A DNA stretch of 64,000 nt, taken from sequence record NC_070956.1. The stretch is one strand, 5' to 3'. The position numbers and the translations under genes are program-made. Numbering within the stretch: position 1 is the first letter of the stretch; each line of letters starts with the position of its first letter. Positions 6,953 through 49,409 of this stretch are shown here, piece by piece. The notes beneath the pieces were generated by a model that saw nothing but the letters and a program-made list of their open reading frames with translations, was not told the origin of the DNA and did not search any database.

Positions 6953-7174
6953 ATGCCCATTGTGGAAATCCTTCTTGGTTTGTTGGCACTACTGTACCTG
7001 TTTATAGGCTGGGAGATTTTCGCACCTATGGGTTGGTACTTTGGTGAACCATTCAAACGAACCTGGTATAACAACGTGTTATACTTTATCGCATTCCCCA
7101 CTGCTGTCGTGATGTGGTTGCCGATTCTTGCGATCATTGTCATTGGTGGGACAACGTTTAAGCGCGAACCGTAA
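6953..7174 (+). CDS. small membrane protein (73 aa, 2 predicted TM)
   Basis: AAGGAG SD, two hydrophobic segments. Confidence 0.7.
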   Translation: MPIVEILLGLLALLYLFIGWEIFAPMGWYFGEPFKRTWYNNVLYFIAFPTAVVMWLPILAIIVIGGTTFKREP

Positions 7175-7935: not shown

Positions 7936-8544
7936 ATGCAGATCAGAAAGCAATTTGATCCCAATAACCTTCCCGAAGATATCAACAGTATCTATGATCA
8001 GAGTCGCTACATTCCGAAACGTAGCGGCGGACCGAACACTCCCAACGAATGGTTTTGGAGCGATCTCCATATTGACCATTTACCGGCGCTTAAGGCGCGT
8101 GGGTGGTTCGGTACCTTACAAGAGTATCAGGATTACGTTGCATTCATCTGGGACAGTCATGTTAAAGATATCGACACCATTCACTTGGTAGGTGATATCG
8201 CATTAACGTGGCAGGGATTGCGTTGGATCAGCGAGAGGACTGGGAAGAAGATTCTCTATATGGGTAACCATGATACAGAACGCGAAAACTGTATTCGTGA
8301 CCTCCTCTCTGTTTACGACGACATCAGGGGATTCTGGAAACACAAGAAAGGTTTCTATATCGGACATTGTCCAAGCCACCCTAGTGAGTTGCGTGGAAGA
8401 AGAATGATCCATGGTCACACTCATACCAAGGTAATACAAGATCAGCGTTTCATCAACGTTGCTATCGATCTTCTTCCTAACGGTCCTGTTAACATGAAGG
8501 ACTTGGTGTCAGGAGATTACCGTAGTTATCGAGACCCGACATAA
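7936..8544 (+). CDS. calcineurin-like metallophosphoesterase
   Basis: SDLHIDH, VGDI, MGNHD, GHCP, IHGHTH, INVAID motifs. Confidence 0.9.
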   Translation: MQIRKQFDPNNLPEDINSIYDQSRYIPKRSGGPNTPNEWFWSDLHIDHLPALKARGWFGTLQEYQDYVAFIWDSHVKDIDTIHLVGDIALTWQGLRWISERTGKKILYMGNHDTERENCIRDLLSVYDDIRGFWKHKKGFYIGHCPSHPSELRGRRMIHGHTHTKVIQDQRFINVAIDLLPNGPVNMKDLVSGDYRSYRDPT

Positions 8545-8550
8545 ACTAAT

Positions 8551-8575
8551 CCATCACTGCCTTAGGGTGGTGATG
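8551..8575 (+). terminator. putative terminator hairpin
   Basis: CCATCACTGCC-TTA-GGGTGGTGATGG imperfect inverted repeat after the stop. Confidence 0.55.
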
Positions 8576-8591
8576 GGTTGATCTCCATATC

Positions 8592-8616
8592 TTTTCAAGT
8601 AGATATTATCTAAGTG
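8592..8616 (+). promoter_or_regulatory. putative phage early promoter
   Basis: TTTT-N6-GATATTATCT-N2-GTG. Confidence 0.65.
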
Positions 8617-8648
8617 TATTCACAATCAAAATTGCTAAGGGGCAATAA

Positions 8649-9122
8649 ATGAATCTCTTAAATAAAGCACTTGTCAAAATGTTTATGCTGGCTGGTTGCC
8701 GGAGTCGAATCTGTGGGAGGGATCGCCAAGTCTTCATTCTGAAGAAATGCGTAGTGAAGATACCAGTGATGTCCAATGGCTGGTTTGAATTCGTCCGTGG
8801 TTATTATTCCAATCTCAAAGAGATGGATAGCATCCGAGGTTACGAAGGTAATTTCCCGGAACATCTTCCAGAAATACTGGGGAGTTATTTATTTGGGTTA
8901 GTCGTCGTTTACAAGAAATATCGTGAGATTATGGATGGTAAAGATGACAATGAGACCGGTGATTTTGCCGAGTACACTAGGTTCCTAGGTAAACTCGATG
9001 ACATCCGGAGAAATGAGAAAAACTCAGAAAAATATATCTGGACTCAAGACACCAAGATCTTTAACTTCGGCTGGGACAAATATGGTCGGGTGGTGGTTAT
9101 TGATCTGGGCACGCCTTATTAA
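8649..9122 (+). CDS. minimal protein kinase-like fold protein 1 (157 aa)
   Basis: GRDRQV, VVKIP (beta3 Lys), NLKE (alphaC Glu), DTKIFN (catalytic loop D-x-K-x-x-N), VIDLG (DFG-like). Confidence 0.65.
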   Translation: MNLLNKALVKMFMLAGCRSRICGRDRQVFILKKCVVKIPVMSNGWFEFVRGYYSNLKEMDSIRGYEGNFPEHLPEILGSYLFGLVVVYKKYREIMDGKDDNETGDFAEYTRFLGKLDDIRRNEKNSEKYIWTQDTKIFNFGWDKYGRVVVIDLGTPY

Positions 9123-9138
9123 CAAAGAGGAAATAGTT

Positions 9139-9537
9139 ATGTCTGAAGTAAACATGAATGAACTCATGAAGAAAGTTCATGAGAAGGGAATGAAAGCGTT
9201 CGAGGAAATGGATCATAAAGAGCGTTGGGCTTTCTGGACCTCTATCTCCGTTCCACCTCTCCGTTTCGTTCTTCGTAACGCAATGTCCTGTGAAGATAAG
9301 AAGTTGCGGTATGATCATCGTGACATTTCGCTGGTGTTGGGTTACGTACTGGGAATGCACAAGGTTGCTCCCATTCGCGAGCTCATGAACAGTCAAGCCA
9401 TTCGCTTGGCCATTGTGGTTCTCCTGGACGCAATGACCGAGATGAAAGAAATGGATACGGTCATGGATGACATGGTCAATATCGCGGCCAAAACGATGAA
9501 CACCATCGACAACAAGATACTCTACTATTACCAATAG
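9139..9537 (+). CDS. hypothetical helical protein (132 aa)
   Basis: GAGGA SD before the ATG at 9139; lies between the two kinase-like genes. Confidence 0.75.
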   Translation: MSEVNMNELMKKVHEKGMKAFEEMDHKERWAFWTSISVPPLRFVLRNAMSCEDKKLRYDHRDISLVLGYVLGMHKVAPIRELMNSQAIRLAIVVLLDAMTEMKEMDTVMDDMVNIAAKTMNTIDNKILYYYQ

Positions 9538-9545
9538 GCTAGTGT

Positions 9546-9935
9546 ATGAAACCTGAAGTCATTGGAACAACTCGCCACGTGAGGTTATTCAAACATTTCG
9601 TGGTGAAGTTTCCTAGGATGACAACGTGGTATGAGAAAGGCTTTAATCTAAGAGTCTTTCTCAATAACCTTTATCTCAACCGTAGAGAGCGCAGATTGGC
9701 AAAGAAGTATAAGGGAGCCGAAGGTATTCCTCATATTTACTTTGCAGACCCATTCGGTTTTGTTGTTGTAATGAAACGTTACAACACTAATCTGAAGACT
9801 GAACAATTCTGCGCGCTTTACAATTCTCTACTCGACAGGACTGAAATAGATCCTGAATTTTGGGAAGACGATTCGACCGTCCCTAACTTCGGTTTAACAG
9901 AGGACGGGAAACTTGTTAAAATTGATTTGGGGTAA
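9546..9935 (+). CDS. minimal protein kinase-like fold protein 2 (129 aa)
   Basis: GTTRHV, VVKFP, NRRE, DSTVPN (D-x4-N), KIDLG at the very C-terminus; aligns by eye with 8649-9122. Confidence 0.65.
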   Translation: MKPEVIGTTRHVRLFKHFVVKFPRMTTWYEKGFNLRVFLNNLYLNRRERRLAKKYKGAEGIPHIYFADPFGFVVVMKRYNTNLKTEQFCALYNSLLDRTEIDPEFWEDDSTVPNFGLTEDGKLVKIDLG

Positions 9936-9938
9936 CTA

Positions 9939-10295
9939 ATGCAGCACTGTACTTTTGATACTGTAGGTGAATTGGTAGGTGTCTTGAATGGTCTCGGGAA
10001 ACCCGAAGCCATGGTGGATAGCTTTTATGTCTATGAACGACAGGAAAGAAACTACATCGTGATGGAACAAACTGATGAAGGTGAAACTTCTTTCAACTTT
10101 GCTCCGGTGCGTCACAATCACCCTTATCAAGGTTATGACGATATCGTAATCTCGTCCTCACTCACCGTGGGTAAATTTATCGAGATGTTAGAAACCTTTC
10201 CACTGGATACACACATCAAGTACATCAGGCTGAAAGGTGCCGACAACATGGTGGCAATGAACGTTGAAGAAGACGGCATCGTAATCCACGATTAA
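9939..10295 (+). CDS. hypothetical protein (118 aa)
   Basis: ORF packed in the operon. Confidence 0.7.
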   Translation: MQHCTFDTVGELVGVLNGLGKPEAMVDSFYVYERQERNYIVMEQTDEGETSFNFAPVRHNHPYQGYDDIVISSSLTVGKFIEMLETFPLDTHIKYIRLKGADNMVAMNVEEDGIVIHD

Positions 10296-10305
10296 GGAAA
10301 CTGTT

Positions 10306-10686
10306 ATGAACAATAAACATTACTACATTCCTGAGCCTAAAACCTTAGGAGTATTTGCCCGGGCATTGGAAAATCACCTCATCACCAAACTGGCCCAAGA
10401 CACAATGGGACATGTCAACTATCCAGTACCAGGTAAATCTCTGAATCTGGGCGCTTATTCGTCCTCAGGACTTAGTACAATGTCATCCAAGGATGTCACT
10501 ACGTTCAGGATGGAAGAAGAGAATGGGTACGATCTCGTATCCAGGTACATGGAGACCATGGATCCGAATTGGGAAGGTGAACCTTATATTCCTCCATCCA
10601 CCCGGACTCCCCGTGACCTCCTGGAAATGAAAACCCACGGGGTTTTGAAGCGCAGTTTCCAACCCCCTAAACGTACCAAGTACTAA
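10306..10686 (+). CDS. hypothetical protein (126 aa)
   Basis: TAAGGA SD. Confidence 0.75.
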   Translation: MNNKHYYIPEPKTLGVFARALENHLITKLAQDTMGHVNYPVPGKSLNLGAYSSSGLSTMSSKDVTTFRMEEENGYDLVSRYMETMDPNWEGEPYIPPSTRTPRDLLEMKTHGVLKRSFQPPKRTKY

Positions 10687-11088: not shown

Positions 11089-11508
11089 ATGAACTCCTAT
11101 CTCAAGAGCTGCATCAACGACGTTAAGTTTTCGATGCTGTTAAAACGCAGACTTACCTGGCACTGGATAATGATTAACATCGTAATACCGGTACGGTGTT
11201 ATTTCAGAGCTAGGGAAATTGTTTATGTTGACATGGGCGTGTGGTTTACCTATAAAGGAGTAACCATGTGTCCGGTCGAATGGAAACTCCAACCCAAATG
11301 GTTCCCATGGACATTGGGTCCTTCCCACAAAGGTTATCGGGTTCATGGTTACAACAAACCCTTTGAACTCACTAGCGAAGTAGAAGTCATGTTGTATTGC
11401 GAACAGCTCGCATACCACAACAGTCGTTTACTTAAATCGGCCAATACACTCACCAAGAAACTTGATGAGATGGTGGCTAACATGGAAAAACAACTTCTCG
11501 AAGGTTAG
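11089..11508 (+). CDS. hypothetical protein (139 aa)
   Basis: TAGGA SD before the ATG at 11089. Confidence 0.7.
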   Translation: MNSYLKSCINDVKFSMLLKRRLTWHWIMINIVIPVRCYFRAREIVYVDMGVWFTYKGVTMCPVEWKLQPKWFPWTLGPSHKGYRVHGYNKPFELTSEVEVMLYCEQLAYHNSRLLKSANTLTKKLDEMVANMEKQLLEG

Positions 11509-11509
11509 C

Positions 11510-12892
11510 ATGACCGACGAACAATATATCAATGAAGAGGTAAGCGAAATGAACCAACATGATACAGCTTTGCAATCTGGACTGCGTCGACTCCAAATTG
11601 CCATCTCCGGTGAGTGGGGTGGAAAGGAGGGTCGGATCGCCAAAGAGGCGGTCGAGCTTTATCTGAAAAACAAGCGGGAGTTCCTGCTTTGTAAGGATCC
11701 CGTCGCACTGGCGGGAATGATGGGTAACACTGAACGTTATCCAGAGCTCGAGGCTCTCTTGGAAACCGGAACCGTCGGAACGAATGCGATTCTTCATGCC
11801 TTCGTTTCCACCACCCAACTCAACTACAAGTATGATGAATGGGCTGGTGATACCGTGGGTTATTGGGGTGTTAATCCCAATACCATCAAGAACAAGTTTG
11901 AACACTGGTACTTGGAACTCATTCGTCAGCTGATGGGCGAGACCTCCAAGGATGACCGCACCGGAACAGGGACCCGTTCCCTGACCACCGCTGTGTACAA
12001 ACACGATCTTCGTGAATCGTTCCCTCTGCTCCGTAGCCGATTCCTGAAACCGGAGAACCCTGGTAAGGAATACATCTGGATGCTTTCCGGTTCCAACAAC
12101 GAAAAGGAACTGGCGGCAATGGGTGTTCCCTTCTGGAGTGAGTTCGCTGATGAGACCGGTGATCTGGGCCCTGTATACGGTTACCTGTGGCGTTACTGGC
12201 CCAATGGTGATGGTACCACCACGGACCAAATCGAATACGTTCTGGAGACTCTCCGCAAGTCCCCTGAAAGTCGACGCGCTGTGGTCAGTTGCTGGCACCC
12301 TGGGCTGATCCCCGATAGCAAAACCCCACCCAAGGAAAACTACAAGGTAGGGAAGCAAGCACTGACTCCGTGCCACTATGCTTTCCAATTCCTGGCAAGT
12401 CCCATTGGGTTCTGCGAACGTCTGGCGTGGGTTAAACAACACAAGCCCGAACAGATCGCATTCCTGTATCCCGTGACTGGTTCTGACTGGACTGAAAGGA
12501 CAGAGGAGGCAATGAATCGGATTGGAGTACCCAAGTACTACCTGGACCTCCAATTCAACATGCGGAGCTCCGATACTGTTCTGGGTCTTCCGGCAAACTT
12601 CAACTTCTACGGTCACATGTGCCACGCATTCGCCAAAGAGTTGAACATGGTCCCTCGTTATCTGTCCTATACCGGGACTGATGTCCATTTGTATGTCAAC
12701 CATATCAAGGGTATGAAGGAAGTCTTTGATTGGGTGAAACAAAACAAAGAGAAAGTCTTTGACGAAGTAGCTCAAATCAAAATCGTGGGTGAGTTCGAAA
12801 ACCTGTACGACATGAAGCCTGAAAACTTCGAGTACATCAACTACAACCGTGAACTGGTCGGTCCGGCCAAACGCTTCCCGGTTGCTGTTTAA
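11510..12892 (+). CDS. thyA: thymidylate synthase with N-terminal extension
   Basis: DRTGTGT, DLGPVYG..WR, SRR, LTPCH (catalytic Cys), RSSD..LGLPAN, DVHLYVNH; DHFR nearby. Confidence 0.95.
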   Translation: MTDEQYINEEVSEMNQHDTALQSGLRRLQIAISGEWGGKEGRIAKEAVELYLKNKREFLLCKDPVALAGMMGNTERYPELEALLETGTVGTNAILHAFVSTTQLNYKYDEWAGDTVGYWGVNPNTIKNKFEHWYLELIRQLMGETSKDDRTGTGTRSLTTAVYKHDLRESFPLLRSRFLKPENPGKEYIWMLSGSNNEKELAAMGVPFWSEFADETGDLGPVYGYLWRYWPNGDGTTTDQIEYVLETLRKSPESRRAVVSCWHPGLIPDSKTPPKENYKVGKQALTPCHYAFQFLASPIGFCERLAWVKQHKPEQIAFLYPVTGSDWTERTEEAMNRIGVPKYYLDLQFNMRSSDTVLGLPANFNFYGHMCHAFAKELNMVPRYLSYTGTDVHLYVNHIKGMKEVFDWVKQNKEKVFDEVAQIKIVGEFENLYDMKPENFEYINYNRELVGPAKRFPVAV

Positions 12893-13992: not shown

Positions 13993-14301
13993 GTGCAATT
14001 TGTATTAGGCCATTTAGTTTTAAATGGCTCTGTGTTGGTAGGTTACTATCTGATCTTTGTTTTGGTCAGTCAAGTGTTCAGGGATGATTATCGTCGTTAT
14101 CAAGTCAGAAGGATATGCAGGATAATTCTGTTATCTTATTTCTCTTGGTACACCTGGAGCTTAGAAAGTCTGGCAATCGCTAATTATGCACTAATGCATG
14201 TTAGGATGACTGCCCTCATCATCGCCATCTGTGCTTTGCAAAATGCAGTTGGGTGTTTAATCGCTAAAGAAGAAAGGAAAGCTAGTTATGATTACCGCTG
14301 A
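13993..14301 (+). CDS. membrane protein (102 aa)
   Basis: GGAGG SD, GTG start, about 3 hydrophobic segments. Confidence 0.65.
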   Translation: MQFVLGHLVLNGSVLVGYYLIFVLVSQVFRDDYRRYQVRRICRIILLSYFSWYTWSLESLAIANYALMHVRMTALIIAICALQNAVGCLIAKEERKASYDYR

Positions 14302-14569
14302 ATTGATCCTCGGAATCTTGTTTGTTTACATCACCGCCATGTTTGGATCCATGTTGGTTAAACCAGGAGTTGACGGTAAAGTGATTCGTAGCACTATCAC
14401 TGTCATCGCCTTTATCATCCTGGGGATATTGATCTGTTCTGTTAACCATCGGAACAGTTGGTTATATCTTGCGTTTACAAGATCAGTTGGTGGGATACTG
14501 TTAGCTCTCGCCGCTGCTCACGTTGTAATGATCGTAGATATTCACCGTAAAACCAATCATAAGAAATAA
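14288..14569 (+). CDS. membrane protein (93 aa)
   Basis: AAGGA SD, about 3 hydrophobic segments. Confidence 0.7.
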   Translation: MITAELILGILFVYITAMFGSMLVKPGVDGKVIRSTITVIAFIILGILICSVNHRNSWLYLAFTRSVGGILLALAAAHVVMIVDIHRKTNHKK

Positions 14570-14579
14570 GGAGGTCGTC

Positions 14580-14978
14580 ATGACTGTTAAAATTGACGCA
14601 CTGAACATATTCGACACTAACGATATTTTCTCGCTGGTGTTTGAATCGCGTAACCGTGAAATTGAAGACGGAACTATTTTGAAGAGCGATGTTGCTGGCG
14701 TTAAAACCACGCTCCATCTGTTTGATCAAAAAGGTTCCCTGATCATTGAAGGTTCAATTGGTCACTCCACCATACTCATTGCCCATGTTAACAACAAGTG
14801 GCTGATGTATATGAACAAGGATACCAATACCTTGCCGGCGGGTGCTTTGCGTAAACAACGCATCCAGTATTTCAACACCGTAATGAAGAACCCAGCAACA
14901 ACTGGTACTTCTTGCGAAACTGACGACTGGGATTCCTTCGCAGGAACCATCTGTCGTTTTATTAAGGACGCGCGATGA
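14580..14978 (+). CDS. hypothetical protein (132 aa)
   Basis: AGGAGG SD. Confidence 0.8.
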   Translation: MTVKIDALNIFDTNDIFSLVFESRNREIEDGTILKSDVAGVKTTLHLFDQKGSLIIEGSIGHSTILIAHVNNKWLMYMNKDTNTLPAGALRKQRIQYFNTVMKNPATTGTSCETDDWDSFAGTICRFIKDAR

Positions 14979-15190
14979 CCGGATATGAGGGGATGTTCTT
15001 CGTCCTTCTCATGTTGATCCCCATGACGATCATTTCGATTGGATTGGGGATGCGTGATCAGGACGTGACCAAAACAAGTATGAAGAACTTCAAAATCAAA
15101 CTCAATCACTTTTGTGGGTTCATCACGATAGCTGGCGCGTTGGCTTATGGGTTCTTCTTATTCTTTCTGAAACAAGGTATAGCATGGTAG
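14975..15190 (+). CDS. membrane protein (71 aa)
   Basis: ATGA overlap; two hydrophobic segments. Confidence 0.7.
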   Translation: MTGYEGMFFVLLMLIPMTIISIGLGMRDQDVTKTSMKNFKIKLNHFCGFITIAGALAYGFFLFFLKQGIAW

Positions 15191-15405
15191 ATTTCTTTAA
15201 GCAGTTTTACGGTGAGGTGATTAACACCTGGTACGTCTTTTTGCTGATCCCGTTCGTGAGTGGTCCCGTGATCACTTTCTTGACGTGGTTGAAGACCCGC
15301 AAGGATGTAAACCGTGAAACCTGGATAAGGATCTACATGAACGAGGTGGCGTCAGAGTACGCCATCTACGTTATTATCGTGGGTCTGGTTTTGTATTTTA
15401 AATAA
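15184..15405 (+). CDS. membrane protein (73 aa)
   Basis: ATG at 15184 overlaps the previous stop; two hydrophobic segments. Confidence 0.65.
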   Translation: MVDFFKQFYGEVINTWYVFLLIPFVSGPVITFLTWLKTRKDVNRETWIRIYMNEVASEYAIYVIIVGLVLYFK

Positions 15406-37804: not shown

Positions 37805-37908
37805 TGTATGCTCCAGAATGTCTAAAGTTTTAACTGTTCTAAACTTTTTCAAGCAGATATTATCATGTTGTAAGTGCATGAAGATATCTAAAATTAGATG
37901 AGGTAACC

Positions 37909-42347: not shown

Positions 42348-45300
42348 TTAACCTAATCCAACGGTGTTCGGTCGACCACCTTTACCTTGGCTGGCCATCA
42401 GGTCATTCAACCTACCAAGCTGACTGATGATCCCACTCAACAATTGCTGAGCTCCTTCATCACTGACTGCTTGTGTTCCCGTGCCAGTCTGTTTGGGAGC
42501 TGGTTTGGGGGTTGGACCAACACTAGAAACAGTAGTAGGACCTGCCGGTTGACTTACTGGTGCCGGAGCACTCGGTTTGGGACCCGGAGCCTGAACTGGT
42601 GTCGGACTCGGAACTGGGTTAGTAACAGCGGCGGTTGGTGCTGCACTAGGAGATACCGGCGGAGACGCTGTCGCAGCTTTCTGTTGATTAACGCTACTCT
42701 TATCCAAGAGCTCATCGACTTCCTGCTTATGAGTCTTCTTGGTAGATGCGACTTTCTCTTCAGCGGCCTTGGGGACATTCTGATCGGCAGCGTTAGGAAC
42801 ATCCGCTATCTTATCTTCACCGCCAGAGGTCGGTGCAAAGTCGGAGGTCTTTGTCGGACCCGCTGCTTTGATTTGACCGTTCTGGAGTTTAGCAAGATAT
42901 TCGGTATATGCCTTACGACGTTCGTCAGTAAAGGGAACAGAGTTACCGCCGTTGATACCACGAACAGCACTATCGAAGTCACCAGTCGTCGCAATGGACT
43001 TGATCGCTTTATTACCCAGGAGGTAACGAACAGCGGAGTCTGCTACAACGTTAGGATCTTCAGATACCAGTCGTGGGTTACTTACGACGTCTATCCCTGT
43101 CTCACGCTTGTACTTTTCGTAGTTGGCTTTACCAGTGAGCTGGAACAAACCACGACCACGATACAACCAACCATCCTCAGGCTTCTCGTTACCGAGTGTG
43201 GGACCTTTGGGCGCTCTACCATACACATACATCGCACGTTGTTCTGGTGGCATTGCTGCTACCTTTTCCGCTGTAGCCATGTCTGGTATGTTCCTGAAAT
43301 ACTTCTTCAGGGTTGGTGCAGACCAGTTGGTGTTTTCTACCGTGGACTTGTAGTTGCCCGTTTCAACCTTGGCAAGTGCCAGAGCGAGAGCAATCTGCTT
43401 GTTGTCTGTGATACCAGCACGGAGCAGACCTTGAAGGAGGAGTTGTTCACCCTGTTCCGGAGTCATGGAGAGACCTTGGTCATCACCTGCCTTCAGAGTG
43501 GGATCCATTTCCCAACCTTCACTGAACCCACCACTATACTGACCACCGCTACCAGCACCTACTGTCCCTGGGGTAGTTCCCATTCCACCAGGAGGGAAAG
43601 CATTAGCAAAACCATTGCTTGCGTAGTTGTTTCCACCGAAAGTCCCACCTTGCTTACCGGCTTGCTCCCTGCGTTTCATACGCATGGCAGTCAGTTCTGC
43701 AATACGGGCCTGTTCAGCTTGTTTCCTGGCTTCGGACTTATCTTGGAGTTGTTCACCGATTGCTTTAGAAGCAGCCTCCTCCATTACCGGGTCGCGCAAC
43801 GCTGCTTTCATTGCATCGCTGTTAAGCGACTTAATGTAAGTATCAGCCCTATCGCTGTCGGTACCGGATTGAGCACCTTCGAACGGACTCGCTTTCACGT
43901 TCCAGACAGAAGTCTCTTCACCATCGACCATTACCATGATCTCTGACAGCACTTTAGCTATTTCGGCTTTGTTGCTATTAGAGAGCTGACGCCAACCTTG
44001 TTTCGGAGATGACCCACGTTGTTTGTAAACCAGTGCGTAGTACTTCTGGAGTACAGGGAGGAAACGTGATTCGAACCAAGCCTTCCAGTTCGCCATCATC
44101 AGTTCTGTTTTGATCCTGAACATCGGCTTGAAGAGAGCCAGTACAGACTCCAGTGGGATTTCGAGTTTCCCCAGCCCATTGGAAAGAACCATGTTCTCTT
44201 CGCAATAACGTTCAAGTTTCAGAACCGCATCTACACGCCAGTTGATATTGGCATCGTTACCGTACACGGCAAGACGAGCAAGCGTGAATGGTTCGATTTC
44301 CGTGTCTCCATCTTTGTGGAGGTCAGATATGTCGATGTCCTTAATTTCCGCTGTGACAGCGAAGGTTTTGTCGATGTGCTCTTGTGATTTGATTAACGAC
44401 TCGTTACCGAACTTATTCTGGAACCAAGCGACAACCTTATTGTCCGATACTTCCGGATTCAGGTTGGCTTGACGTTGCTCATCATAAGTCCTCAGCTTGA
44501 GACCGTCCGCCTTCTTCTCGGCTGGATAAGCTTTACGAAGTTCATTCATCAAATCAGCGACTTCGCCAGTAGTAGCAATTCTTGACATCGTCCCAGTATC
44601 TTGGTCAATCGGGACGTCGATAGTGTAAGGATTGGTCGACATGTGGCCAATGGCTTCCTGTACACGCTCTGCGACAAGAACTACTTCGTGGGTCTGACCA
44701 GCATCGTACTCTTGAAGATCGCCAAACCTTGCAGCGTTAGCCGCGGCAACGAAAGTCAAGAAGATGGGCTTGAACCGTGCCTGGAACCAAGTATTGATAT
44801 TGTCACGAGGAACCGGAGTTGAGTTCTCAACGAACTGTCTGAAGACTTCAGCAACTGCCTCTGGTTTACTGAAACCTGCTGATCCACTACCCACATTAAC
44901 ATGTGGGAGCAACATCATCTCGAGACGTTGTACACGCTCTGCCAAATCACTCCGCCATTCACGAATACCGTACATCGCGAAACGAAGACGTTTCTGAATG
45001 GAGTTGGCCAGCAGAGTTGTCCGGTAAGTAGTGCCGTTGTACTTGTACCCTTCCGAGTTAGCCATATGCTGTTCGGCGTCACGACGGTCTGTGAACAACT
45101 GTCCATCATCGGTCCAGTACACACCAGTGTTCTTGATACCGTCAATCCAGCTCTTGGGCATAACCGCTTCAAGAACCGTGGTCCCGATACCAATCTGAGG
45201 AATCCAGTTTGCAGCATCCTCTATCTGATCAGCAGTGGTCACTGGACGTTTCTGGTTGAACATGTTCTCTTCAGTAGGTGTGGAAGAACTGTCGTCACCT

Positions 45301-48300
45301 GTCAACAGGTTGTATGCTAGAGCACTACCACCAAGGAGTGCGCCGACACGACCCATCCCTTTATTGAGTTTACCCCCTCGTCCACCAGGGCCGCCCATAC
45401 CAAGCAGTCCGCCGATACCGCTGCCGGCCATCCTGGCGATGGGACCTAACAGACCACCCAACATCTTTATACCTCCGCTAAGAAGTTTAAAGATGGGAGA
45501 ACCGATACCCAATACGCCAGAGAACAACGCACTTCCAATTGTTCCTAAACGTTTCACGCTGGCAGCCATGGAGCCACCAACCATCCCGAGTAATGAACCC
45601 AGTGGGTTCTTGAAGAATCCGCCGATGGAACCCATCATGTCGTAGAGCTTGCCAAAGAGACCAGGTTTCTTGCCCTTCTCTTCACCTTCCCCTTTCTTCT
45701 TACTCTTACCGGTGAGTGTGTCACCAATATCGATGATTGCTTTCTGGACTCGATCAGATTGCGATGCTGCGGCCTGACGCGCTTTATCCTCAAGGGAGTT
45801 CTTACGCATCGCTGGACCACCGGCGTCATCAAGTTCTTCGTCCTCAATCTCCATACCAAACTTTTGGGAAAGGAGCTTGTAGATGCGATCAAGACGGCGT
45901 TCAACACCGTTCATGTTGGTACCACGACCACGAACCGCAGAGACGTGTGAACTGGCTTGTTCGTTAGCGCGTTCGAAGCCAAGCTTACCCATCATGTTGG
46001 TAAAGAGTTGTTTACCCATACCGACGGCAGCACCAGCCATGTTAGAACCCATTGTTCCCACTTGTCTGATACGTTGACCTGTACGAGTCACCAAACCTTC
46101 ATCAAACTCGGCTTGGGAGATAAGTTCGTTGCCTTCTTCATCGTAAACTGGACCAGAGATTTCGTTCCAACCCTTGACAGGTTTGAAAGTTCCGTTCTCA
46201 TCTTTCCAGTATTCAACGTTCTTAAATCCTACTGCACGGAGACGGGGATTTTGGAGGTCACCTTTCACAAAGACGTCTTGTTGATAGATGATTTCTTTAC
46301 CCATGTCGATACCGGCACGGAGTTTACCGATTGGGTTCACAAAGTTGTAGGCATTGACAATCATGCCCTTTGCGGTTTCGATTCCACGAAGCACTACAGC
46401 GCGACCATCAGGACCGAAGATGCGACCACCCAGTTCACGAACTGTAATGATTGCTTTGGACACCACGTCAATGACAGGACCTTTAATTTCACGGTACGTG
46501 TTAATAACACGTTTAGTGATCGCGTCAATGTACTCACCAGCTTTGAGCTTTGCTGACTTCAGAATGCTTTCACCGTTTTCATCTACGATGTCTTCATCAT
46601 CAGAAGGTTCGCTCGCACTGACTTTTTCTTTACGGTCCTTGTTACCCCAGTACTGAACGAGACCGCCCAGAGCCAGACCACCTACAGCCATAGAAGCTGC
46701 GGCAATAGGGTTAGATGCAAAGTTGGAGGCAATGCCACCAAGTACGCCACCCAACACTATCGGAGAGTTCTTGACCAGTAAGTCCATGCCACGACCGAAC
46801 ATACCTTCCGGGAACAGACCTTTAATCTTACCCATCAGACCTTCTTTAGCCTGCTCTTCTTGGCGTTCTTCATTGGCGTTCTTTGGAGCACCTGAGAACA
46901 ACTTGCCTTTATTAGCAAGATCCAGAAGTGAAGAAAGGATTGTTTCCATCCGCTGATTGCTTTCTGCAATCTTGGATGTGTTGGAAACGATCTCTCCGGT
47001 CTGGGTATCCATGTATGCCGTATCCGGCTTACCGGACTTGGAAGACATGTTGCTGCTAGCCAGCACGTCCAATTTCTCTGTCAGTGTGTTGAGAGAACTG
47101 GAGAGACCAGCGAAAGAGGCGCCTTCAGTACGTTTTCCATCATTGGCCGGAGCGGGTCGATCAGGGATGTGGAAACTGTTCCTGGTTTTCTTACCTTGAG
47201 TTTTGTCGCTGGGATTCATCCCTCTGAGCGCGGGGTTGTTAGGATCGTCCATGAACATACCGATACGTTCGTGGAACACTTCCATATCAACCTTGTCGAT
47301 ACCGTTCTCTGTATAAATCACGCCAAGGTCACGGAGCAACTGTTCATTACCAGTGGCCCTGAGCATGTCGATACGTTCGGCGATATTCGGCGCGAGGTCT
47401 TTCAGGTTGGTTGCTGCGGACCCTGCTTTATTGAGACGCTCTTGATACCTGGAGTTCCGCATCTCTGTCATCACTTGCATACGCTCGAAACCTGTGGTCT
47501 CGTTGAAGCGAGCAATGTCTTGATCACGCAAACCAAAGTGACGACGCACCACCGCATGGATCTCGTCGAGCATCGGACCAGAGATACCAGGAATGTCCCC
47601 GATATAGTAGAACGGGTTAAAGTTCTTCTCTCGGTCAACGTCTCTTGCGATTACCTTAGCAAATGCTTTACGAGCTCCCTGGGACAGCGTCTTCTTGGGA
47701 TCCAGGTCATCAACGAACTCAAGAGCAGCAGTCGCATAGCGATCGAATTCAGCAGCGGGCATCAAGTCGGCTTGAACAGCGATCTGTTTGTTGGTTTCGT
47801 TCTGGAACTGACCACGCATGTAGTTATAAGTAACCAACTCGGCGTTACTGTCACCAGTTCTGATCATCTCCAACAGTTGGTTGGTGCGAGAAATCAAACC
47901 GGGTATTACTTCATTCAGTGTAACGTTGTTACCCTGAGTCCAGATACCAGCATCGACCAAATCACGTGGGTTACGTTTCTTGAGGGTGTACTGTGTGCCT
48001 TTAGCCTGGTTCATCTCAGACATGAACGAGTTCATTGCGGCTTTAGCGCGGTTACTCGCGGCATTCTGAATTGTCCACCTGGCTTTGCTCATGGGTTGTT
48101 TGTCAGGAGGAAGACTGGCAACGTAGTCTTCGTAATCAATGAACGGCATCTCGTCCATTGCTTGGTAGTCTTCAGCCATGAAGTTGATCAAGCCAACTCC
48201 GGCGTTAGACATATACGAAGCTTTCGAACCCGTGTTAGAGAGACGCCCCCATTGGCGACGCAATGCCTTTGCTTCGGCCGGGTTCTTCTTGGCAAGACTT

Positions 48301-49409
48301 TCCAACATTCTTTTACCAGGACCTCTGGCAAAGAAGTTGGGGAGGTTACGGACGGCAGCACCCGCTAAACCTCGACCGGCCATGTCCCCTAACATACCAG
48401 CAGATACTGGCATCCCGTCAGACATCTCGAGCATGTCGGCGACCATTCCCAACACACTACTAGCACTATCTGAAGCATCTTGCCTGGCTTCTTTACCGAA
48501 ACGATCCCTGATGAGACCCGTCAGACCACCTACACGACGTCCTACCGTACTAAACAGGGAATCACGCATGTACTGTTTAGAAGCAGTGAAGTTTGATGTC
48601 TTTTGGTAATCAGACATCATCGTTCCTTTCAGGATCTTCTTCAGTTCGGCAACCTGGGCGTGCATGCCCTTTTCCATGAACTTGTAGTACTTGACGTTGG
48701 CCACATAGCCTTTCGCCATTAAGTTCAATTTGGTCTGTTCGATTTTGAACTGTACGTTGCGCTGGTAATCGTTAAGATCGCGAACACTAGTCTCGATATT
48801 GACGAGTTGGCGGTTACCGGCCATGACGGCAGAACTGATTTGACCACCAACGTTCGCAGACATTACGTTGAGGGAGTTCGTCATTTCTGAGAACAACCCT
48901 TCTTGGCGACTCATGACGCTGTCGAGCACCAAAGTCAAGTCATAATCAGACTCTTCTTCAATACCCTCCATGCTATTATAAGACCCATCACTCTTCTCCC
49001 AGTCAGAGAAATCTTTCTGGGAAAAGTCATCCATTTTGTTACGAAGACCGCCAGGTAACTTCTCACCGAAACGGTTGGAAAGCTGGCCGGCAATGCTTTG
49101 TAATGATCTGACCGATTCGTAGTTTTGCTCTTTGAGCTCTGTCTTGAGTTCATCGTAGCGTTCGATGGCACGGTTGGTTCGGTCGAAAGCGTTACTGAAA
49201 GTGTTGGGTAAAATAGTGCGGAGTGATCTAGTGATCGCCGCGCCTGACCCTACTGTTTCATTAACGAGTCCACCCAAGAACCCCGACGCCATACTTGACA
49301 CGAATCCTTTACCTTTGAAAGGATCGATATCAAAATCTCCATCGAGATCGAAATCACCCGCAAACGGGTCATCCCAATCATCGAGACCGAGATCATCTTC
49401 ATATGACAT
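42348..49409 (-). CDS. tail tape measure-like protein with C-terminal GH19 (lysozyme/chitinase-like) domain; positional equivalent of phiKZ gp181
   Basis: 2353 aa, helical with Gly-rich hydrophobic segments; KVETG...EN, DGWLYRGRGLFQLTGKANY, INGG at about 42900-43440; divergent from the vRNAP beta' gene. Confidence 0.85.
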   Translation of the reverse strand: MSYEDDLGLDDWDDPFAGDFDLDGDFDIDPFKGKGFVSSMASGFLGGLVNETVGSGAAITRSLRTILPNTFSNAFDRTNRAIERYDELKTELKEQNYESVRSLQSIAGQLSNRFGEKLPGGLRNKMDDFSQKDFSDWEKSDGSYNSMEGIEEESDYDLTLVLDSVMSRQEGLFSEMTNSLNVMSANVGGQISSAVMAGNRQLVNIETSVRDLNDYQRNVQFKIEQTKLNLMAKGYVANVKYYKFMEKGMHAQVAELKKILKGTMMSDYQKTSNFTASKQYMRDSLFSTVGRRVGGLTGLIRDRFGKEARQDASDSASSVLGMVADMLEMSDGMPVSAGMLGDMAGRGLAGAAVRNLPNFFARGPGKRMLESLAKKNPAEAKALRRQWGRLSNTGSKASYMSNAGVGLINFMAEDYQAMDEMPFIDYEDYVASLPPDKQPMSKARWTIQNAASNRAKAAMNSFMSEMNQAKGTQYTLKKRNPRDLVDAGIWTQGNNVTLNEVIPGLISRTNQLLEMIRTGDSNAELVTYNYMRGQFQNETNKQIAVQADLMPAAEFDRYATAALEFVDDLDPKKTLSQGARKAFAKVIARDVDREKNFNPFYYIGDIPGISGPMLDEIHAVVRRHFGLRDQDIARFNETTGFERMQVMTEMRNSRYQERLNKAGSAATNLKDLAPNIAERIDMLRATGNEQLLRDLGVIYTENGIDKVDMEVFHERIGMFMDDPNNPALRGMNPSDKTQGKKTRNSFHIPDRPAPANDGKRTEGASFAGLSSSLNTLTEKLDVLASSNMSSKSGKPDTAYMDTQTGEIVSNTSKIAESNQRMETILSSLLDLANKGKLFSGAPKNANEERQEEQAKEGLMGKIKGLFPEGMFGRGMDLLVKNSPIVLGGVLGGIASNFASNPIAAASMAVGGLALGGLVQYWGNKDRKEKVSASEPSDDEDIVDENGESILKSAKLKAGEYIDAITKRVINTYREIKGPVIDVVSKAIITVRELGGRIFGPDGRAVVLRGIETAKGMIVNAYNFVNPIGKLRAGIDMGKEIIYQQDVFVKGDLQNPRLRAVGFKNVEYWKDENGTFKPVKGWNEISGPVYDEEGNELISQAEFDEGLVTRTGQRIRQVGTMGSNMAGAAVGMGKQLFTNMMGKLGFERANEQASSHVSAVRGRGTNMNGVERRLDRIYKLLSQKFGMEIEDEELDDAGGPAMRKNSLEDKARQAAASQSDRVQKAIIDIGDTLTGKSKKKGEGEEKGKKPGLFGKLYDMMGSIGGFFKNPLGSLLGMVGGSMAASVKRLGTIGSALFSGVLGIGSPIFKLLSGGIKMLGGLLGPIARMAGSGIGGLLGMGGPGGRGGKLNKGMGRVGALLGGSALAYNLLTGDDSSSTPTEENMFNQKRPVTTADQIEDAANWIPQIGIGTTVLEAVMPKSWIDGIKNTGVYWTDDGQLFTDRRDAEQHMANSEGYKYNGTTYRTTLLANSIQKRLRFAMYGIREWRSDLAERVQRLEMMLLPHVNVGSGSAGFSKPEAVAEVFRQFVENSTPVPRDNINTWFQARFKPIFLTFVAAANAARFGDLQEYDAGQTHEVVLVAERVQEAIGHMSTNPYTIDVPIDQDTGTMSRIATTGEVADLMNELRKAYPAEKKADGLKLRTYDEQRQANLNPEVSDNKVVAWFQNKFGNESLIKSQEHIDKTFAVTAEIKDIDISDLHKDGDTEIEPFTLARLAVYGNDANINWRVDAVLKLERYCEENMVLSNGLGKLEIPLESVLALFKPMFRIKTELMMANWKAWFESRFLPVLQKYYALVYKQRGSSPKQGWRQLSNSNKAEIAKVLSEIMVMVDGEETSVWNVKASPFEGAQSGTDSDRADTYIKSLNSDAMKAALRDPVMEEAASKAIGEQLQDKSEARKQAEQARIAELTAMRMKRREQAGKQGGTFGGNNYASNGFANAFPPGGMGTTPGTVGAGSGGQYSGGFSEGWEMDPTLKAGDDQGLSMTPEQGEQLLLQGLLRAGITDNKQIALALALAKVETGNYKSTVENTNWSAPTLKKYFRNIPDMATAEKVAAMPPEQRAMYVYGRAPKGPTLGNEKPEDGWLYRGRGLFQLTGKANYEKYKRETGIDVVSNPRLVSEDPNVVADSAVRYLLGNKAIKSIATTGDFDSAVRGINGGNSVPFTDERRKAYTEYLAKLQNGQIKAAGPTKTSDFAPTSGGEDKIADVPNAADQNVPKAAEEKVASTKKTHKQEVDELLDKSSVNQQKAATASPPVSPSAAPTAAVTNPVPSPTPVQAPGPKPSAPAPVSQPAGPTTVSSVGPTPKPAPKQTGTGTQAVSDEGAQQLLSGIISQLGRLNDLMASQGKGGRPNTVGLG

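What the first reader, a model, noticed from the sequence alone, without database searches (positions are those of the whole stretch)
8649..9935. Pair of paralogous ultra-minimal kinase-fold proteins flanking a helical partner gene
Seen in sequence: two ORFs (157 and 129 aa) align by eye along their length: G-x-x-R-x-V, VVK(I/F)P, N-x-x-E, (L/I)P-x-I...FG-x-VVV-x-K-(K/R)Y, D-x4-NFG...G-x-x-V-x-IDLG. Established: these correspond to the protein-kinase-like ATP-binding Lys, alphaC Glu, catalytic-loop Asp/Asn and DFG motifs. Unusual: both proteins stop 0-3 residues after DLG, so they lack the activation segment and the substrate-binding C-lobe helices; this is even shorter than RIO/Bud32-type kinases. 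They share a unit opened by an early-promoter motif, with a 132-aa helical ORF between them, and the block looks more AT-rich than the core genes (visual impression only). Inference: an early phosphorylation module for host takeover or anti-defence, in which the middle protein may supply the missing lobe or act as substrate or adaptor.
Basis: partly seen in the sequence, partly recalled or inferred. Interest (0 to 1): 0.8.

Follow-up and report, generated by a model that had tools for sequence, protein, structure and literature searches.

The report
Two mini kinase-like phage proteins
Two small early genes of an Aeromonas jumbo phage encode about 120-residue protein-kinase-like domains that stop exactly at the magnesium-binding motif; they belong to an uncharacterised phage-wide family that may be the smallest kinase-type catalytic core yet seen.

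Summary
The window is Aeromonas phage LAh10, a phiKZ-like jumbo phage. ORF A (8649-9122, 157 aa) and ORF B (9546-9935, 129 aa) are homologous (BLASTP E 1e-13). Both belong to PHROG 4301 ("unknown function"). A profile search found 174 clusters, mostly 115-150 aa.

Lys, Glu and the final Asp are 99-100% conserved. The catalytic-loop Asp and Asn are conserved as the covarying sets D..N or E..S. 99 of 144 members end 0-3 residues after the D-[Y/L]-G motif.

The AlphaFold2 model of ORF B is confident (pLDDT 93.9). 46 of its 50 best PDB matches are kinase-like folds, led by Rio2 and Bud32/PRPK. No curated Pfam or NCBIfam model captures the family.

An early-type promoter (ATATTAT-N6-G) behind a hairpin precedes ORF A, and also precedes its orthologues in four genera. 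The block is unusually AT-rich.

The helical middle gene exists only in Ludhianavirus. Elsewhere the paralogues abut or occur singly, so it is not the missing lobe.

The most likely function is an early ATP-dependent phosphotransferase or ATPase whose substrate recognition comes from oligomerisation or a host partner. Activity and target are inferred, not shown. I rate it a new variant of a known kind.

The parts
8547..8580 (+). Hairpin (15-bp stem, 4-nt loop) just after the stop of the upstream phosphoesterase gene. It is the likely 3' end of the preceding transcription unit.
   Evidence: RNA fold gives -22.6 kcal/mol, z = -4.28, and 0 of 200 shuffles fold as well. It is identical in D3 and D6. 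Analogous hairpins precede the other copies of the promoter motif.
8587..8616 (+). Promoter-like element: upstream ATATCTTTT (8587-8595) and core GATATTAT-N6-G (8602-8616). The putative transcription start is the G at 8616.
   Evidence: The pattern gives 7 matches against 1.18 expected, 6 of them in + strand intergenic gaps. The same element lies upstream of the A-type orthologue in PS1, AerS_266, AhC3_1 and D6. The architecture equals the mapped AR9 early consensus AAATATATATTAT-(6N)-G (PMC5312081).
8649..9122 (+). ORF A (LAh10_107, 157 aa): an A-type mini kinase-like domain with a roughly 20-residue N-terminal extension and a longer insert between the hinge and the catalytic loop.
   Evidence: phrog_4301 E 4.7e-14. 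Family HMM E 2.4e-30 to 3.7e-30, depending on the ORF set searched. Key residues are K37, E58, D134, K136, N139 and D152. The BFVD model of the 98.7%-identical D6 protein matches the ORF B model at E 6.8e-7, TMq 0.70.
9048..9110 (+). ORF A catalytic loop D-T-K-I-F-N-F-G through I-D-L-G (residues 134-154). Only 3 residues follow.
9139..9537 (+). Middle ORF M (LAh10_108 with a corrected start, 132 aa): an all-helical ORFan restricted to Ludhianavirus. It is an insertion between the two paralogues.
   Evidence: tblastn finds it only in LAh10, D3, D6 and D9. One cluster appears among 5.8 billion proteins. It has no Pfam or PHROG match. AF2 predicts 7 helices at pLDDT 60. Foldseek best E is 0.28. 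D3 annotates the same start.
9546..9935 (+). ORF B (LAh10_109, 129 aa): a B-type mini kinase-like domain whose last residue is the Gly of D-L-G.
   Evidence: phrog_4301 E 2.1e-10. AF2 pLDDT 93.9, pTM 0.84. Foldseek top hits are Rio2, RIOK2, Bud32/PRPK, WbdD and AceK. Key residues are K21, E48, D109, N114 and D127.
9870..9932 (+). ORF B catalytic loop D-S-T-V-P-N-F-G through I-D-L-G (residues 109-129). The stop codon follows directly.

Best explanation
ORF A and ORF B are two anciently diverged members of a phage-restricted family (PHROG 4301). The family consists of stand-alone domains of about 120 residues with a protein-kinase-like fold. Each contains only the N-lobe (strands carrying an invariant Lys, and a long helix carrying an invariant Glu), the hinge, one C-lobe helix, the catalytic loop (D-x-K-x-x-N) and the Mg-binding D-[Y/L/F]-G. 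The protein ends at that last motif. Shown here: homology of A and B, family size, residue conservation, truncation as the family norm, a confident predicted PKL fold, and a conserved early-type promoter. Inferred from the fact that every nucleotide-, metal- and phosphate-handling residue of kinases is kept: the proteins bind ATP/Mg and either transfer its gamma-phosphate or hydrolyse it. Also inferred: they are made at the very start of infection from a virion-RNA-polymerase promoter and act on host, or possibly phage, targets. They lack the activation segment and the helices that normally hold substrate and stabilise the C-lobe. Substrate recognition and stabilisation must therefore come from self-association, A-B association or a host partner, as in other reduced kinases (Bud32 in KEOPS; OspG with E2~ubiquitin). 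The A-type copy keeps the catalytic-loop Lys and heads the unit in every relative. The B-type copy has lost that Lys, is absent from some relatives, and may be an accessory or regulatory copy. The helical middle gene is a lineage-specific insertion, not part of the mechanism.
For: A and B are homologous: E 1e-13. Both match phrog_4301. A profile search of 1.84 billion representatives gives 174 clusters at E <= 1e-3, mostly 115-150 aa. Column shares in 144 sequences: G7 143, R10 144, K21 144, E48 143, D109 as D 98 / E 46, N114 as N 104 / S 38, D127 143. The triplets covary: D-K-N in 55 and E-K-S in 38. 99 of 144 end 0-3 residues after the last motif. The family profile against PDB sequences gives best hits (E from 0.013) that are almost all kinases, aligned in register on the catalytic loop plus Mg-binding motif. 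Individual members hit the ABC1, PIP49_C and APH Pfam models. AF2 gives pLDDT 93.9 and pTM 0.84 with kinase-order secondary structure. In Foldseek against PDB, 46 of the top 50 are PKL folds: Rio2 E 4.7e-3 prob 1.00 TMq 0.57, Bud32/PRPK, WbdD, AceK, APH, phosphorylase kinase TMq 0.64, and Ark1 RNA kinase. In BFVD the Ralstonia RP12 homologue is named 'Protein kinase domain-containing protein'. Purifying selection is clear. A-type and B-type orthogroups both keep K/E/D/N/D across four genera. The early-type promoter is conserved upstream of A-type genes (PMC5312081). An early phage kinase that disarms defences has a precedent in T7 (bioRxiv 10.1101/2024.12.20.629319). Kinases lacking subdomains VIII-XI can be active (PMC12756638).
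Against: There are no activity, binding or expression data. The fold is a prediction. No Foldseek PDB hit reaches E <= 1e-3, and rmsd values are 4-8 A. Sequence-profile hits to kinases are below significance (E >= 0.013). No Pfam or NCBIfam model passes its cut-off. The glycine-rich loop is replaced by G-x-T-R-x-V with an invariant Arg. The central C-lobe helix that anchors the catalytic machinery in all characterised kinases is absent, so catalytic competence of the isolated domain is uncertain. B-type copies lack the catalytic-loop Lys. Copy number in the clade varies from 1 to 3, which argues against an obligate A-B pair. No conserved neighbour or fused domain points to a substrate.
Confidence: 0.6

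Rival explanations
1. The domain is an ATP-driven switch or ATPase rather than a kinase of third-party substrates. Like its nearest structural relatives (RIO kinases in ribosome maturation, Bud32 in KEOPS), it would bind a partner complex and use ATP binding or hydrolysis (possibly autophosphorylation) to change that partner's state.
For: The closest folds are Rio2, RIOK2 and Bud32/PRPK. The protein has no substrate-binding elements at all. All nucleotide and metal residues are kept.
Against: No partner gene is conserved next to family members. No Kae1-like or ribosome-factor context is present. The catalytic base position (D or E) is kept in all 144 aligned family members, which fits transfer as well as hydrolysis.
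Confidence: 0.15
2. The domain is a kinase of a non-protein substrate (RNA 2'-OH, a nucleotide or signalling molecule, or a sugar). Several small or atypical PKL enzymes work this way: ArkI on tRNA, WbdD and APH on sugars and antibiotics.
For: Ark1 RNA kinase (173 aa), WbdD, APH(2''), MTR kinase and choline kinase appear among the fold matches. ArkI lacks the peptide-binding subdomain and uses a basic surface for tRNA (PMC9095486). The family is basic: median pI 9.1, and 81% of members are above pI 8. In the Aeromonas phiKZ-like relatives AhC3_1 and AerS_266 the genes lie within a few kb upstream of a thymidylate-synthase-like gene.
Against: The linkage to nucleotide-metabolism genes is not conserved outside the clade. 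No small-molecule-binding insert is present in a 120-residue domain. The A-type catalytic loop has the D-x-K-x-x-N form that aligned best with Ser/Thr kinases.
Confidence: 0.15
3. The domain is a non-catalytic nucleotide binder (sponge or decoy). It would sequester ATP or a defence-signalling nucleotide, or mimic a host kinase to titrate a host factor.
For: The proteins are small, early and phage-restricted, like known phage sponges. They lack everything except the nucleotide pocket.
Against: A pure binder would not need the catalytic Asp/Glu, the Asn/Ser and the Mg-binding Asp to be kept in 99-100% of members, nor their covariation.
Confidence: 0.05
4. Split kinase: the helical middle protein (for A) and the next gene (for B) provide the missing C-lobe in trans.
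For: M is about the size of a kinase C-lobe remainder and is predicted helical. M starts 17 nt after ORF A's stop codon.
Against: M exists only in Ludhianavirus. The paralogues abut directly in PS1 and AerS_266. Downstream genes of other family members range from 61 to 204 aa and are unrelated. The M model has no kinase match: best E 0.28, TM 0.28. M is less constrained than A or B.
Confidence: 0.03

Closest known systems
RIO kinases and Bud32/PRPK (atypical, reduced protein-kinase-like ATPases/kinases)
   Same: They are the best structural matches (Rio2 1zar E 4.7e-3, prob 1.00, TMq 0.57; Bud32 and PRPK entries). They have no activation segment and a reduced C-lobe, and they work inside complexes with partners.
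   Different: These relatives are 189-290 residues long and keep helices after the Mg-binding motif. They are cellular proteins with known partners (ribosome, Kae1/Cgi121). No Pfam RIO1 or Bud32-type model matches the phage proteins. The phage family has G-x-T-R-x-V instead of their phosphate-binding loops.
OspG / NleH 'minimal kinase fold' effectors
   Same: They are described as active kinases lacking subdomains VIII-XI, and they depend on a bound partner for activity (PMC12756638).
   Different: From my own knowledge, they are about 200 residues long and still have C-terminal helices. They act in eukaryotic cells. They did not come back as hits in any search here, so no homology closer than the superfamily is shown. 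No sequence of theirs was fetched or typed.
ArkI / Ark1 archaeal RNA kinase
   Same: It is a small PKL enzyme lacking the peptide-binding subdomain, and it appears among the fold matches (8yv5_B, 173 aa, TMq 0.53). It shows that reduced PKL domains can phosphorylate RNA (PMC9095486).
   Different: It retains subdomains IX and XI and a long basic helix for tRNA. It is archaeal or bacterial, not phage-encoded.
Phage T7 gp0.7 protein kinase (phrog_2828)
   Same: It is an early phage-encoded kinase and a functional precedent for promiscuous phosphorylation that disarms host defences (bioRxiv 10.1101/2024.12.20.629319). T7-like 'protein kinase' models appear as weak BFVD matches.
   Different: It belongs to a different PHROG. 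Its kinase domain is about 240 residues with a complete C-lobe, followed by a shut-off domain.
PHROG 4301 (unknown function)
   Same: Both ORFs are members (E 4.7e-14 and 2.1e-10), as are all long relatives tested.
   Different: The PHROG carries no functional or structural annotation. Its 225-position profile includes N- and C-terminal extensions that most members, including these two, lack.

Membership tests
PHROG 4301 | Significant match to the family HMM | tested here: met
   E 4.7e-14 (A) and 2.1e-10 (B), profile positions 45-168 of 225
Protein-kinase-like (PKL) superfamily | Two-lobed fold: N-lobe sheet plus helix, hinge, catalytic-loop/Mg-loop strands | tested here: met
   AF2 model pLDDT 93.9 with the kinase order of elements. 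46 of 50 top Foldseek PDB hits are PKL. This rests on a prediction only.
Protein-kinase-like (PKL) superfamily | Conserved strand Lys, helix Glu, catalytic Asp, Asn, and Mg-binding Asp in the right order and spacing | tested here: met
   K 144/144, E 143/144, D or E 144/144, N or S 142/144, D 143/144. The register was confirmed by profile alignments to solved kinases.
Protein-kinase-like (PKL) superfamily | Match to a curated PKL family model above its threshold | tested here: not met
   Neither window protein matches any Pfam or NCBIfam family. Only 6 of 144 members give hits to ABC1, PIP49_C or APH at E <= 0.1 (best 4e-4; curated cut-offs not compared).
Hanks-type (eukaryotic-like) protein kinases, Pfam Pkinase | Complete catalytic domain including the activation segment and subdomains VIII-XI | tested here: not met
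   The proteins end 0-3 residues after the Mg-binding motif. No helix follows in the model.
Hanks-type (eukaryotic-like) protein kinases, Pfam Pkinase | Canonical glycine-rich phosphate-binding loop | tested here: not met
   The family has G-x-T-R-x-V with one Gly and an invariant Arg.
RIO kinase family | Match to the RIO domain model; RIO-specific N-terminal helix and flexible loop | tested here: not met
   No RIO1 Pfam hit for any of 144 members. The model has about 9 residues before the first strand. The resemblance is at fold level only.
Bud32/PRPK (KEOPS) | Association with Kae1/Cgi121 and a C-terminal tail that reaches into Kae1 | tested here: not met
   There is no tail after the Mg-binding motif. 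No conserved neighbour was found, and no Kae1-like gene is annotated near the family members examined.
OspG/NleH minimal kinases | Detectable homology to the effector kinase family | tested here: not met
   They were not returned by PDB sequence searches or among the top 50 Foldseek hits. The resemblance is architectural only.
T7 gp0.7-type phage kinases (phrog_2828) | Match to phrog_2828 | tested here: not met
   Only phrog_4301 was matched.
Active phosphotransferase (any PKL) | ATP/Mg binding and phosphate transfer | not testable with these tools
   Inferred from residue conservation only.
phiKZ-like virion-RNAP early promoter | Extended AT-rich conserved element with the start point 6 nt downstream (ATATTAT-N6-G) | tested here: met
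   Present at 8602-8616 and five further + strand intergenic copies. Conserved upstream of the orthologues. The architecture is as in PMC5312081. Actual early transcription was not tested.

The most novel reading that the evidence does not exclude
A roughly 120-residue domain that ends at the Mg-binding motif is a self-sufficient kinase catalytic core, the smallest known. Phages of many lineages would deploy it in the first minutes of infection. It would become active by pairing (A-type catalytic copy with B-type Lys-less copy, or homodimers) or by docking on a host protein that serves both as surrogate C-lobe and as target, giving a compact host-takeover or anti-defence phosphorylation weapon.
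Probability: 0.3. Interest if true: 0.8.

Novelty: new variant of a known kind. Interest (0 to 1): 0.62.

Why it matters
All characterised protein-kinase-like enzymes, including the 'minimal' ones (RIO, Bud32, OspG/NleH, ArkI), keep helices after the Mg-binding motif. Those helices anchor the catalytic machinery. Here a conserved, strongly constrained family keeps every catalytic residue yet stops at that motif. If it is active, it would redefine the minimal unit needed for kinase chemistry. It would also give a tractable system for asking what the C-lobe contributes. For phage biology it adds a widespread early gene family with a plausible enzymatic role. Members occur in phiKZ-like, N4-like, RaK2/CBB-like and other phages, and in metagenomic viral contigs. 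Only T7's kinase has so far been shown to reprogramme the host and disarm defences by phosphorylation. The family is invisible to Pfam and NCBIfam annotation, so these genes are 'hypothetical' in every genome examined.

Tried and rejected
- Single-sequence searches of ORF A and B against Pfam, NCBIfam, PADLOC and PDB sequences gave nothing meaningful.
- Word-indexed protein searches were shallow, giving 2 and 14 hits. The exhaustive profile search was what revealed the family.
- The split-kinase / middle-gene-partner idea was rejected on distribution and fold.
- A kinase-phosphatase module with the upstream 'Ser/Thr phosphatase' was rejected for two reasons. That gene is only a generic metallophosphoesterase. 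It is also separated by a hairpin plus promoter and is not adjacent to the pair in PS1 or AerS_266.
- Conserved neighbours: all-against-all BLAST of flanking ORFs in 17 loci found none outside the Aeromonas clade.
- Fused domains: the C-terminal tails of the 12 members with tails of 25 or more residues are unrelated to one another. They have no Pfam match, only two unknown-function PHROG hits in one of them, and no significant PDB match.
- Cellular homologues: one pattern scan of 185,579 species genomes found none. The pattern was narrow, so this is weak evidence.
- I could not inspect model coordinates, so spatial clustering of the catalytic residues is inferred from secondary-structure positions only.
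Full report
**Source and setting.** The window is identical to Aeromonas phage LAh10 (MK838116.1, 260 kb, genus Ludhianavirus); window position equals record position minus 124,000. The Aeromonas clade to which LAh10 belongs is phiKZ-like. The window carries multisubunit RNA-polymerase beta genes. The related phage AerS_266 encodes chimallin, PhuZ and both virion and non-virion RNA polymerases (PMC10673249). The three genes are annotated only as hypothetical proteins LAh10_107, LAh10_108 and LAh10_109.

**Observation check.**
- ORF A is 8649-9122 (157 aa). The middle ORF M is 9139-9537 (132 aa). ORF B is 9546-9935 (129 aa).
- GenBank starts LAh10_108 at 8998, overlapping ORF A by 125 nt. The ATG at 9139 has a strong Shine-Dalgarno sequence and is the start used in phage D3.
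- A and B align end to end: BLASTP E 1e-13, 31% identity.
- A ends three residues after I-D-L-G and B ends on its Gly.
- Against D3 and D6 the genes show strong purifying selection. Synonymous/non-synonymous codon differences are A 21/1 and 18/2, B 11/0 and 10/3, and M 19/6 and 25/7.
- The block 8545-9935 has GC 0.422 against 0.477 +/- 0.021 for equal-sized windows, the lowest 0.2%.

**The family.**
- Both proteins match PHROG 4301, 'unknown function'. They match nothing in Pfam, NCBIfam or PADLOC.
- An exhaustive profile search of 1.84 billion cluster representatives found 174 clusters at E <= 1e-3. Nearly all are 115-150 residues, with the match running to the protein's end.
- In an alignment of 144 sequences the shares, in ORF B numbering, are: G7 143, R10 144, V12 138, K21 144, P23 142, N45 140, E48 143, G71 141, D109 as D 98 or E 46, K111 99, N114 as N 104 or S 38, G116 138, D127 143, position 128 as Y 132, and G129 114.
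- The catalytic-loop triplet covaries as D-K-N (55) or E-K-S (38).
- After the final Gly, 26 members have no residue, 73 have 1-3, 20 have 4-10, 21 have 11-30 and 4 have more than 30.
- The twelve members with tails of 25 or more residues carry tails that are unrelated to each other. These tails match no Pfam model and only two unknown-function PHROGs.

Ending at the Mg-binding motif is therefore the ancestral, normal state of a self-contained domain. It is not a truncation peculiar to LAh10.

**Kinase-likeness.**
- The family profile searched against all PDB sequences returns, as its best sub-threshold hits (E 0.013-1.4), almost only protein kinases. These are TTK, isocitrate-dehydrogenase kinase AceK, p38, KSR, PKC iota, twitchin and CK1. 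They align in register on the catalytic loop and the Mg-binding motif.
- A few members individually hit the ABC1, PIP49_C and APH Pfam models. One hits the kinase of defence system PD-T4-6.
- AlphaFold2 on ORF B with the family alignment gives pLDDT 93.9 and pTM 0.84. The elements are strands 10-14 and 18-23 (K21), helix 35-54 (E48), strands 64-67 and 74-77, helices 85-98 and 103-107, then strands 115-117 and 123-125. These last strands bracket the loop with D109/N114 and lead to D127.
- In Foldseek against the PDB, 46 of the top 50 are PKL folds. They are led by Rio2 (E 4.7e-3, probability 1.00, TMq 0.57), RIOK2, Bud32/PRPK, WbdD and AceK. Also present are APH(2''), a lanthipeptide-synthetase kinase domain, phosphorylase kinase (TMq 0.64) and the 173-residue RNA kinase Ark1.
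- Against BFVD, the model matches the PS1 orthologue (E 2.5e-16). It matches the 209-residue Ralstonia RP12 homologue that UniProt names 'Protein kinase domain-containing protein' (E 9e-8). It matches the D6 copy of ORF A (E 6.8e-7, TMq 0.70). It also matches uncharacterised proteins of CBB, RaK2, Lacusarx and PaMx11.

The PKL assignment is thus well supported at fold and motif level. No curated model captures the family, and no PDB match reaches E 1e-3.

**Organisation.**
- A hairpin follows the upstream phosphoesterase gene (8547-8580; -22.6 kcal/mol, z -4.28).
- Then comes ATATCTTTT (8587-8595) and GATATTAT-N6-G (8602-8616).
- The motif pattern gives 7 matches in the window against 1.18 expected. 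Six are in + strand intergenic gaps, and most of those directly follow a hairpin.
- The same element precedes the A-type orthologue in PS1, AerS_266, AhC3_1 and D6.
- Its architecture equals the experimentally mapped early (virion-RNA-polymerase) consensus of phage AR9, AAATATATATTAT-(6N)-G. [quoted passage not shown]

An early unit starting near G 8616 is therefore a well-founded inference, though untested.

**The paralogues and the middle gene.**
- Across Ludhianavirus, AhC3_1, Chaoshanvirus (AerS_266) and Ferozepurvirus (PS1), the genes form two orthogroups. A-type scores 112-162 bits within the group and B-type scores 112-127 bits. Scores between groups are only 36-69 bits, no more than either scores against N4-like or other phages.
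- All eight keep K, E, D and the final D. One B-type sequence (AerS_266) aligns Q-C at the Asn-Gly positions. A-type keeps the catalytic-loop Lys, while B-type has T, H or C there.
- Copy number in the clade is 1 (CF8, AVP1, ACP1, pAEv1810; A-type only), 2, or 3 (PS1, PS2).
- In PS1 and AerS_266 the two genes abut or overlap.
- M is found only in the four Ludhianavirus genomes, and in one cluster among 5.8 billion proteins.
- M is predicted as seven helices at low confidence (pLDDT 60). It has no structural match: best E 0.28, TM 0.28.

M is an inserted ORFan, not a conserved partner or surrogate lobe.

**Mechanism.** Retention of the complete nucleotide, metal and phosphate-handling residue set, with covariation, in a domain under strong constraint argues for chemistry on ATP rather than mere binding. 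The domain has none of the elements that hold protein substrates or stabilise the C-lobe. It must therefore rely on self-association, A-B association or a host partner. The closest structural relatives (RIO, Bud32) are partner-dependent ATPases/kinases, and the architecturally closest effectors (OspG/NleH) need a bound host protein (PMC12756638).

I rank the possibilities as follows.
- An early phosphotransferase/ATPase acting on host targets: 0.6 for the overall statement. Within it I give about 0.85 for the fold, about 0.55 for catalysis, and about 0.4 for host takeover or anti-defence.
- A pure ATP switch: 0.15.
- A non-protein-substrate kinase in the manner of ArkI (PMC9095486): 0.15. The family's basic pI (median 9.1) gives this some support.
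- A sponge or decoy: 0.05.
- A split kinase with M: 0.03.

**Comparison and novelty.** The family works like a reduced PKL enzyme but is not a member of RIO, Bud32, Hanks-type, OspG/NleH or T7 gp0.7 (phrog_2828) families; the membership table gives the tests. It is shorter than all of them by 50-150 residues. I found no paper describing it in nine full-text searches. Partial recognition exists in the automatic UniProt name for the long RP12 homologue. I rate it a new variant of a known kind.

- I could not read model coordinates, run multimer predictions, or run profile-profile searches against PKL libraries.
- The search for cellular homologues was narrow.
- The added rule forbids this.
- None of those was from a toxin, effector or virus. 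The register claim rests on the tool alignments instead.

Noticed in passing
window 8998-9537 (LAh10_108): The GenBank start at 8998 overlaps ORF A by 125 nt. ATG 9139 has the Shine-Dalgarno sequence AAGAGGAAA and is the start annotated in phage D3, so the product is 132 aa, not 179 aa.
   Followed up: yes
window 5271, 8602, 17431, 20911, 22491, 62627 (+ strand): Six intergenic copies of an early-type promoter element (..ATATCTTTT.. GATATTAT-N6-G), most directly behind a stable hairpin. They are terminator-promoter cassettes that partition the + strand genes into units. A seventh match, at 37856, lies inside a minus-strand gene.
   Followed up: partly
window 7936-8544 (LAh10_106): The 'putative serine/threonine protein phosphatase' is supported only as a generic calcineurin-like metallophosphoesterase: phrog_547 E 5e-40, Pfam Metallophos_2 E 0.021 (below cut-off), and best PDB hit the hypothetical protein aq_1665 at E 0.009. 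It is not adjacent to the kinase-like pair in PS1 or AerS_266.
   Followed up: partly
window 10306-10686 (LAh10_111): This gene evolves fast: 25 non-synonymous against 19 synonymous codon differences between LAh10 and D6, where neighbouring genes show 1-3 non-synonymous. This suggests relaxed or diversifying selection. It has no family match.
   Followed up: no
window 6953-7174, 14288-14569, 14975-15190, 15112-15405: Hydrophobic small ORFs (73, 93, 71 and 97 aa) are unannotated in the LAh10 record and lie in long 'intergenic' gaps with coding-like GC. The first is annotated in D3 and D6. They are probably small membrane proteins.
   Followed up: no
window 11465-12892 (LAh10_114): The thymidylate-synthase-like protein is 476 aa, which is long for ThyA. 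The paper on the relative AerS_266 reports modified DNA, so this could be a deoxynucleotide-modifying homologue. GNAT, DHFR and thymidine-kinase genes lie downstream.
   Followed up: no
window 9939-10295 (LAh10_110): This acidic 118-aa protein (pI 4.6) lies directly after ORF B. It shares similarity (blastp E <= 1e-4) with longer proteins of about 250 aa that lie 1.1 kb downstream of the pair in AerS_266, and between the two copies in AhC3_1. It also matches phrog_13970 over residues 55-118.
   Followed up: no
family alignment A2 (relatives, not the window): The family splits into two covarying catalytic-loop types, D-x-K-x-x-N (55) and E-x-K-x-x-S (38). A Glu/Ser version of the kinase catalytic loop is unusual.
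   Followed up: partly
window 42348-49409 (- strand, LAh10_147): A single 7-kb gene (2,353 aa) is annotated merely as 'putative endolysin'. At that size it is more likely a large virion-associated multidomain protein with a lytic domain.
   Followed up: no
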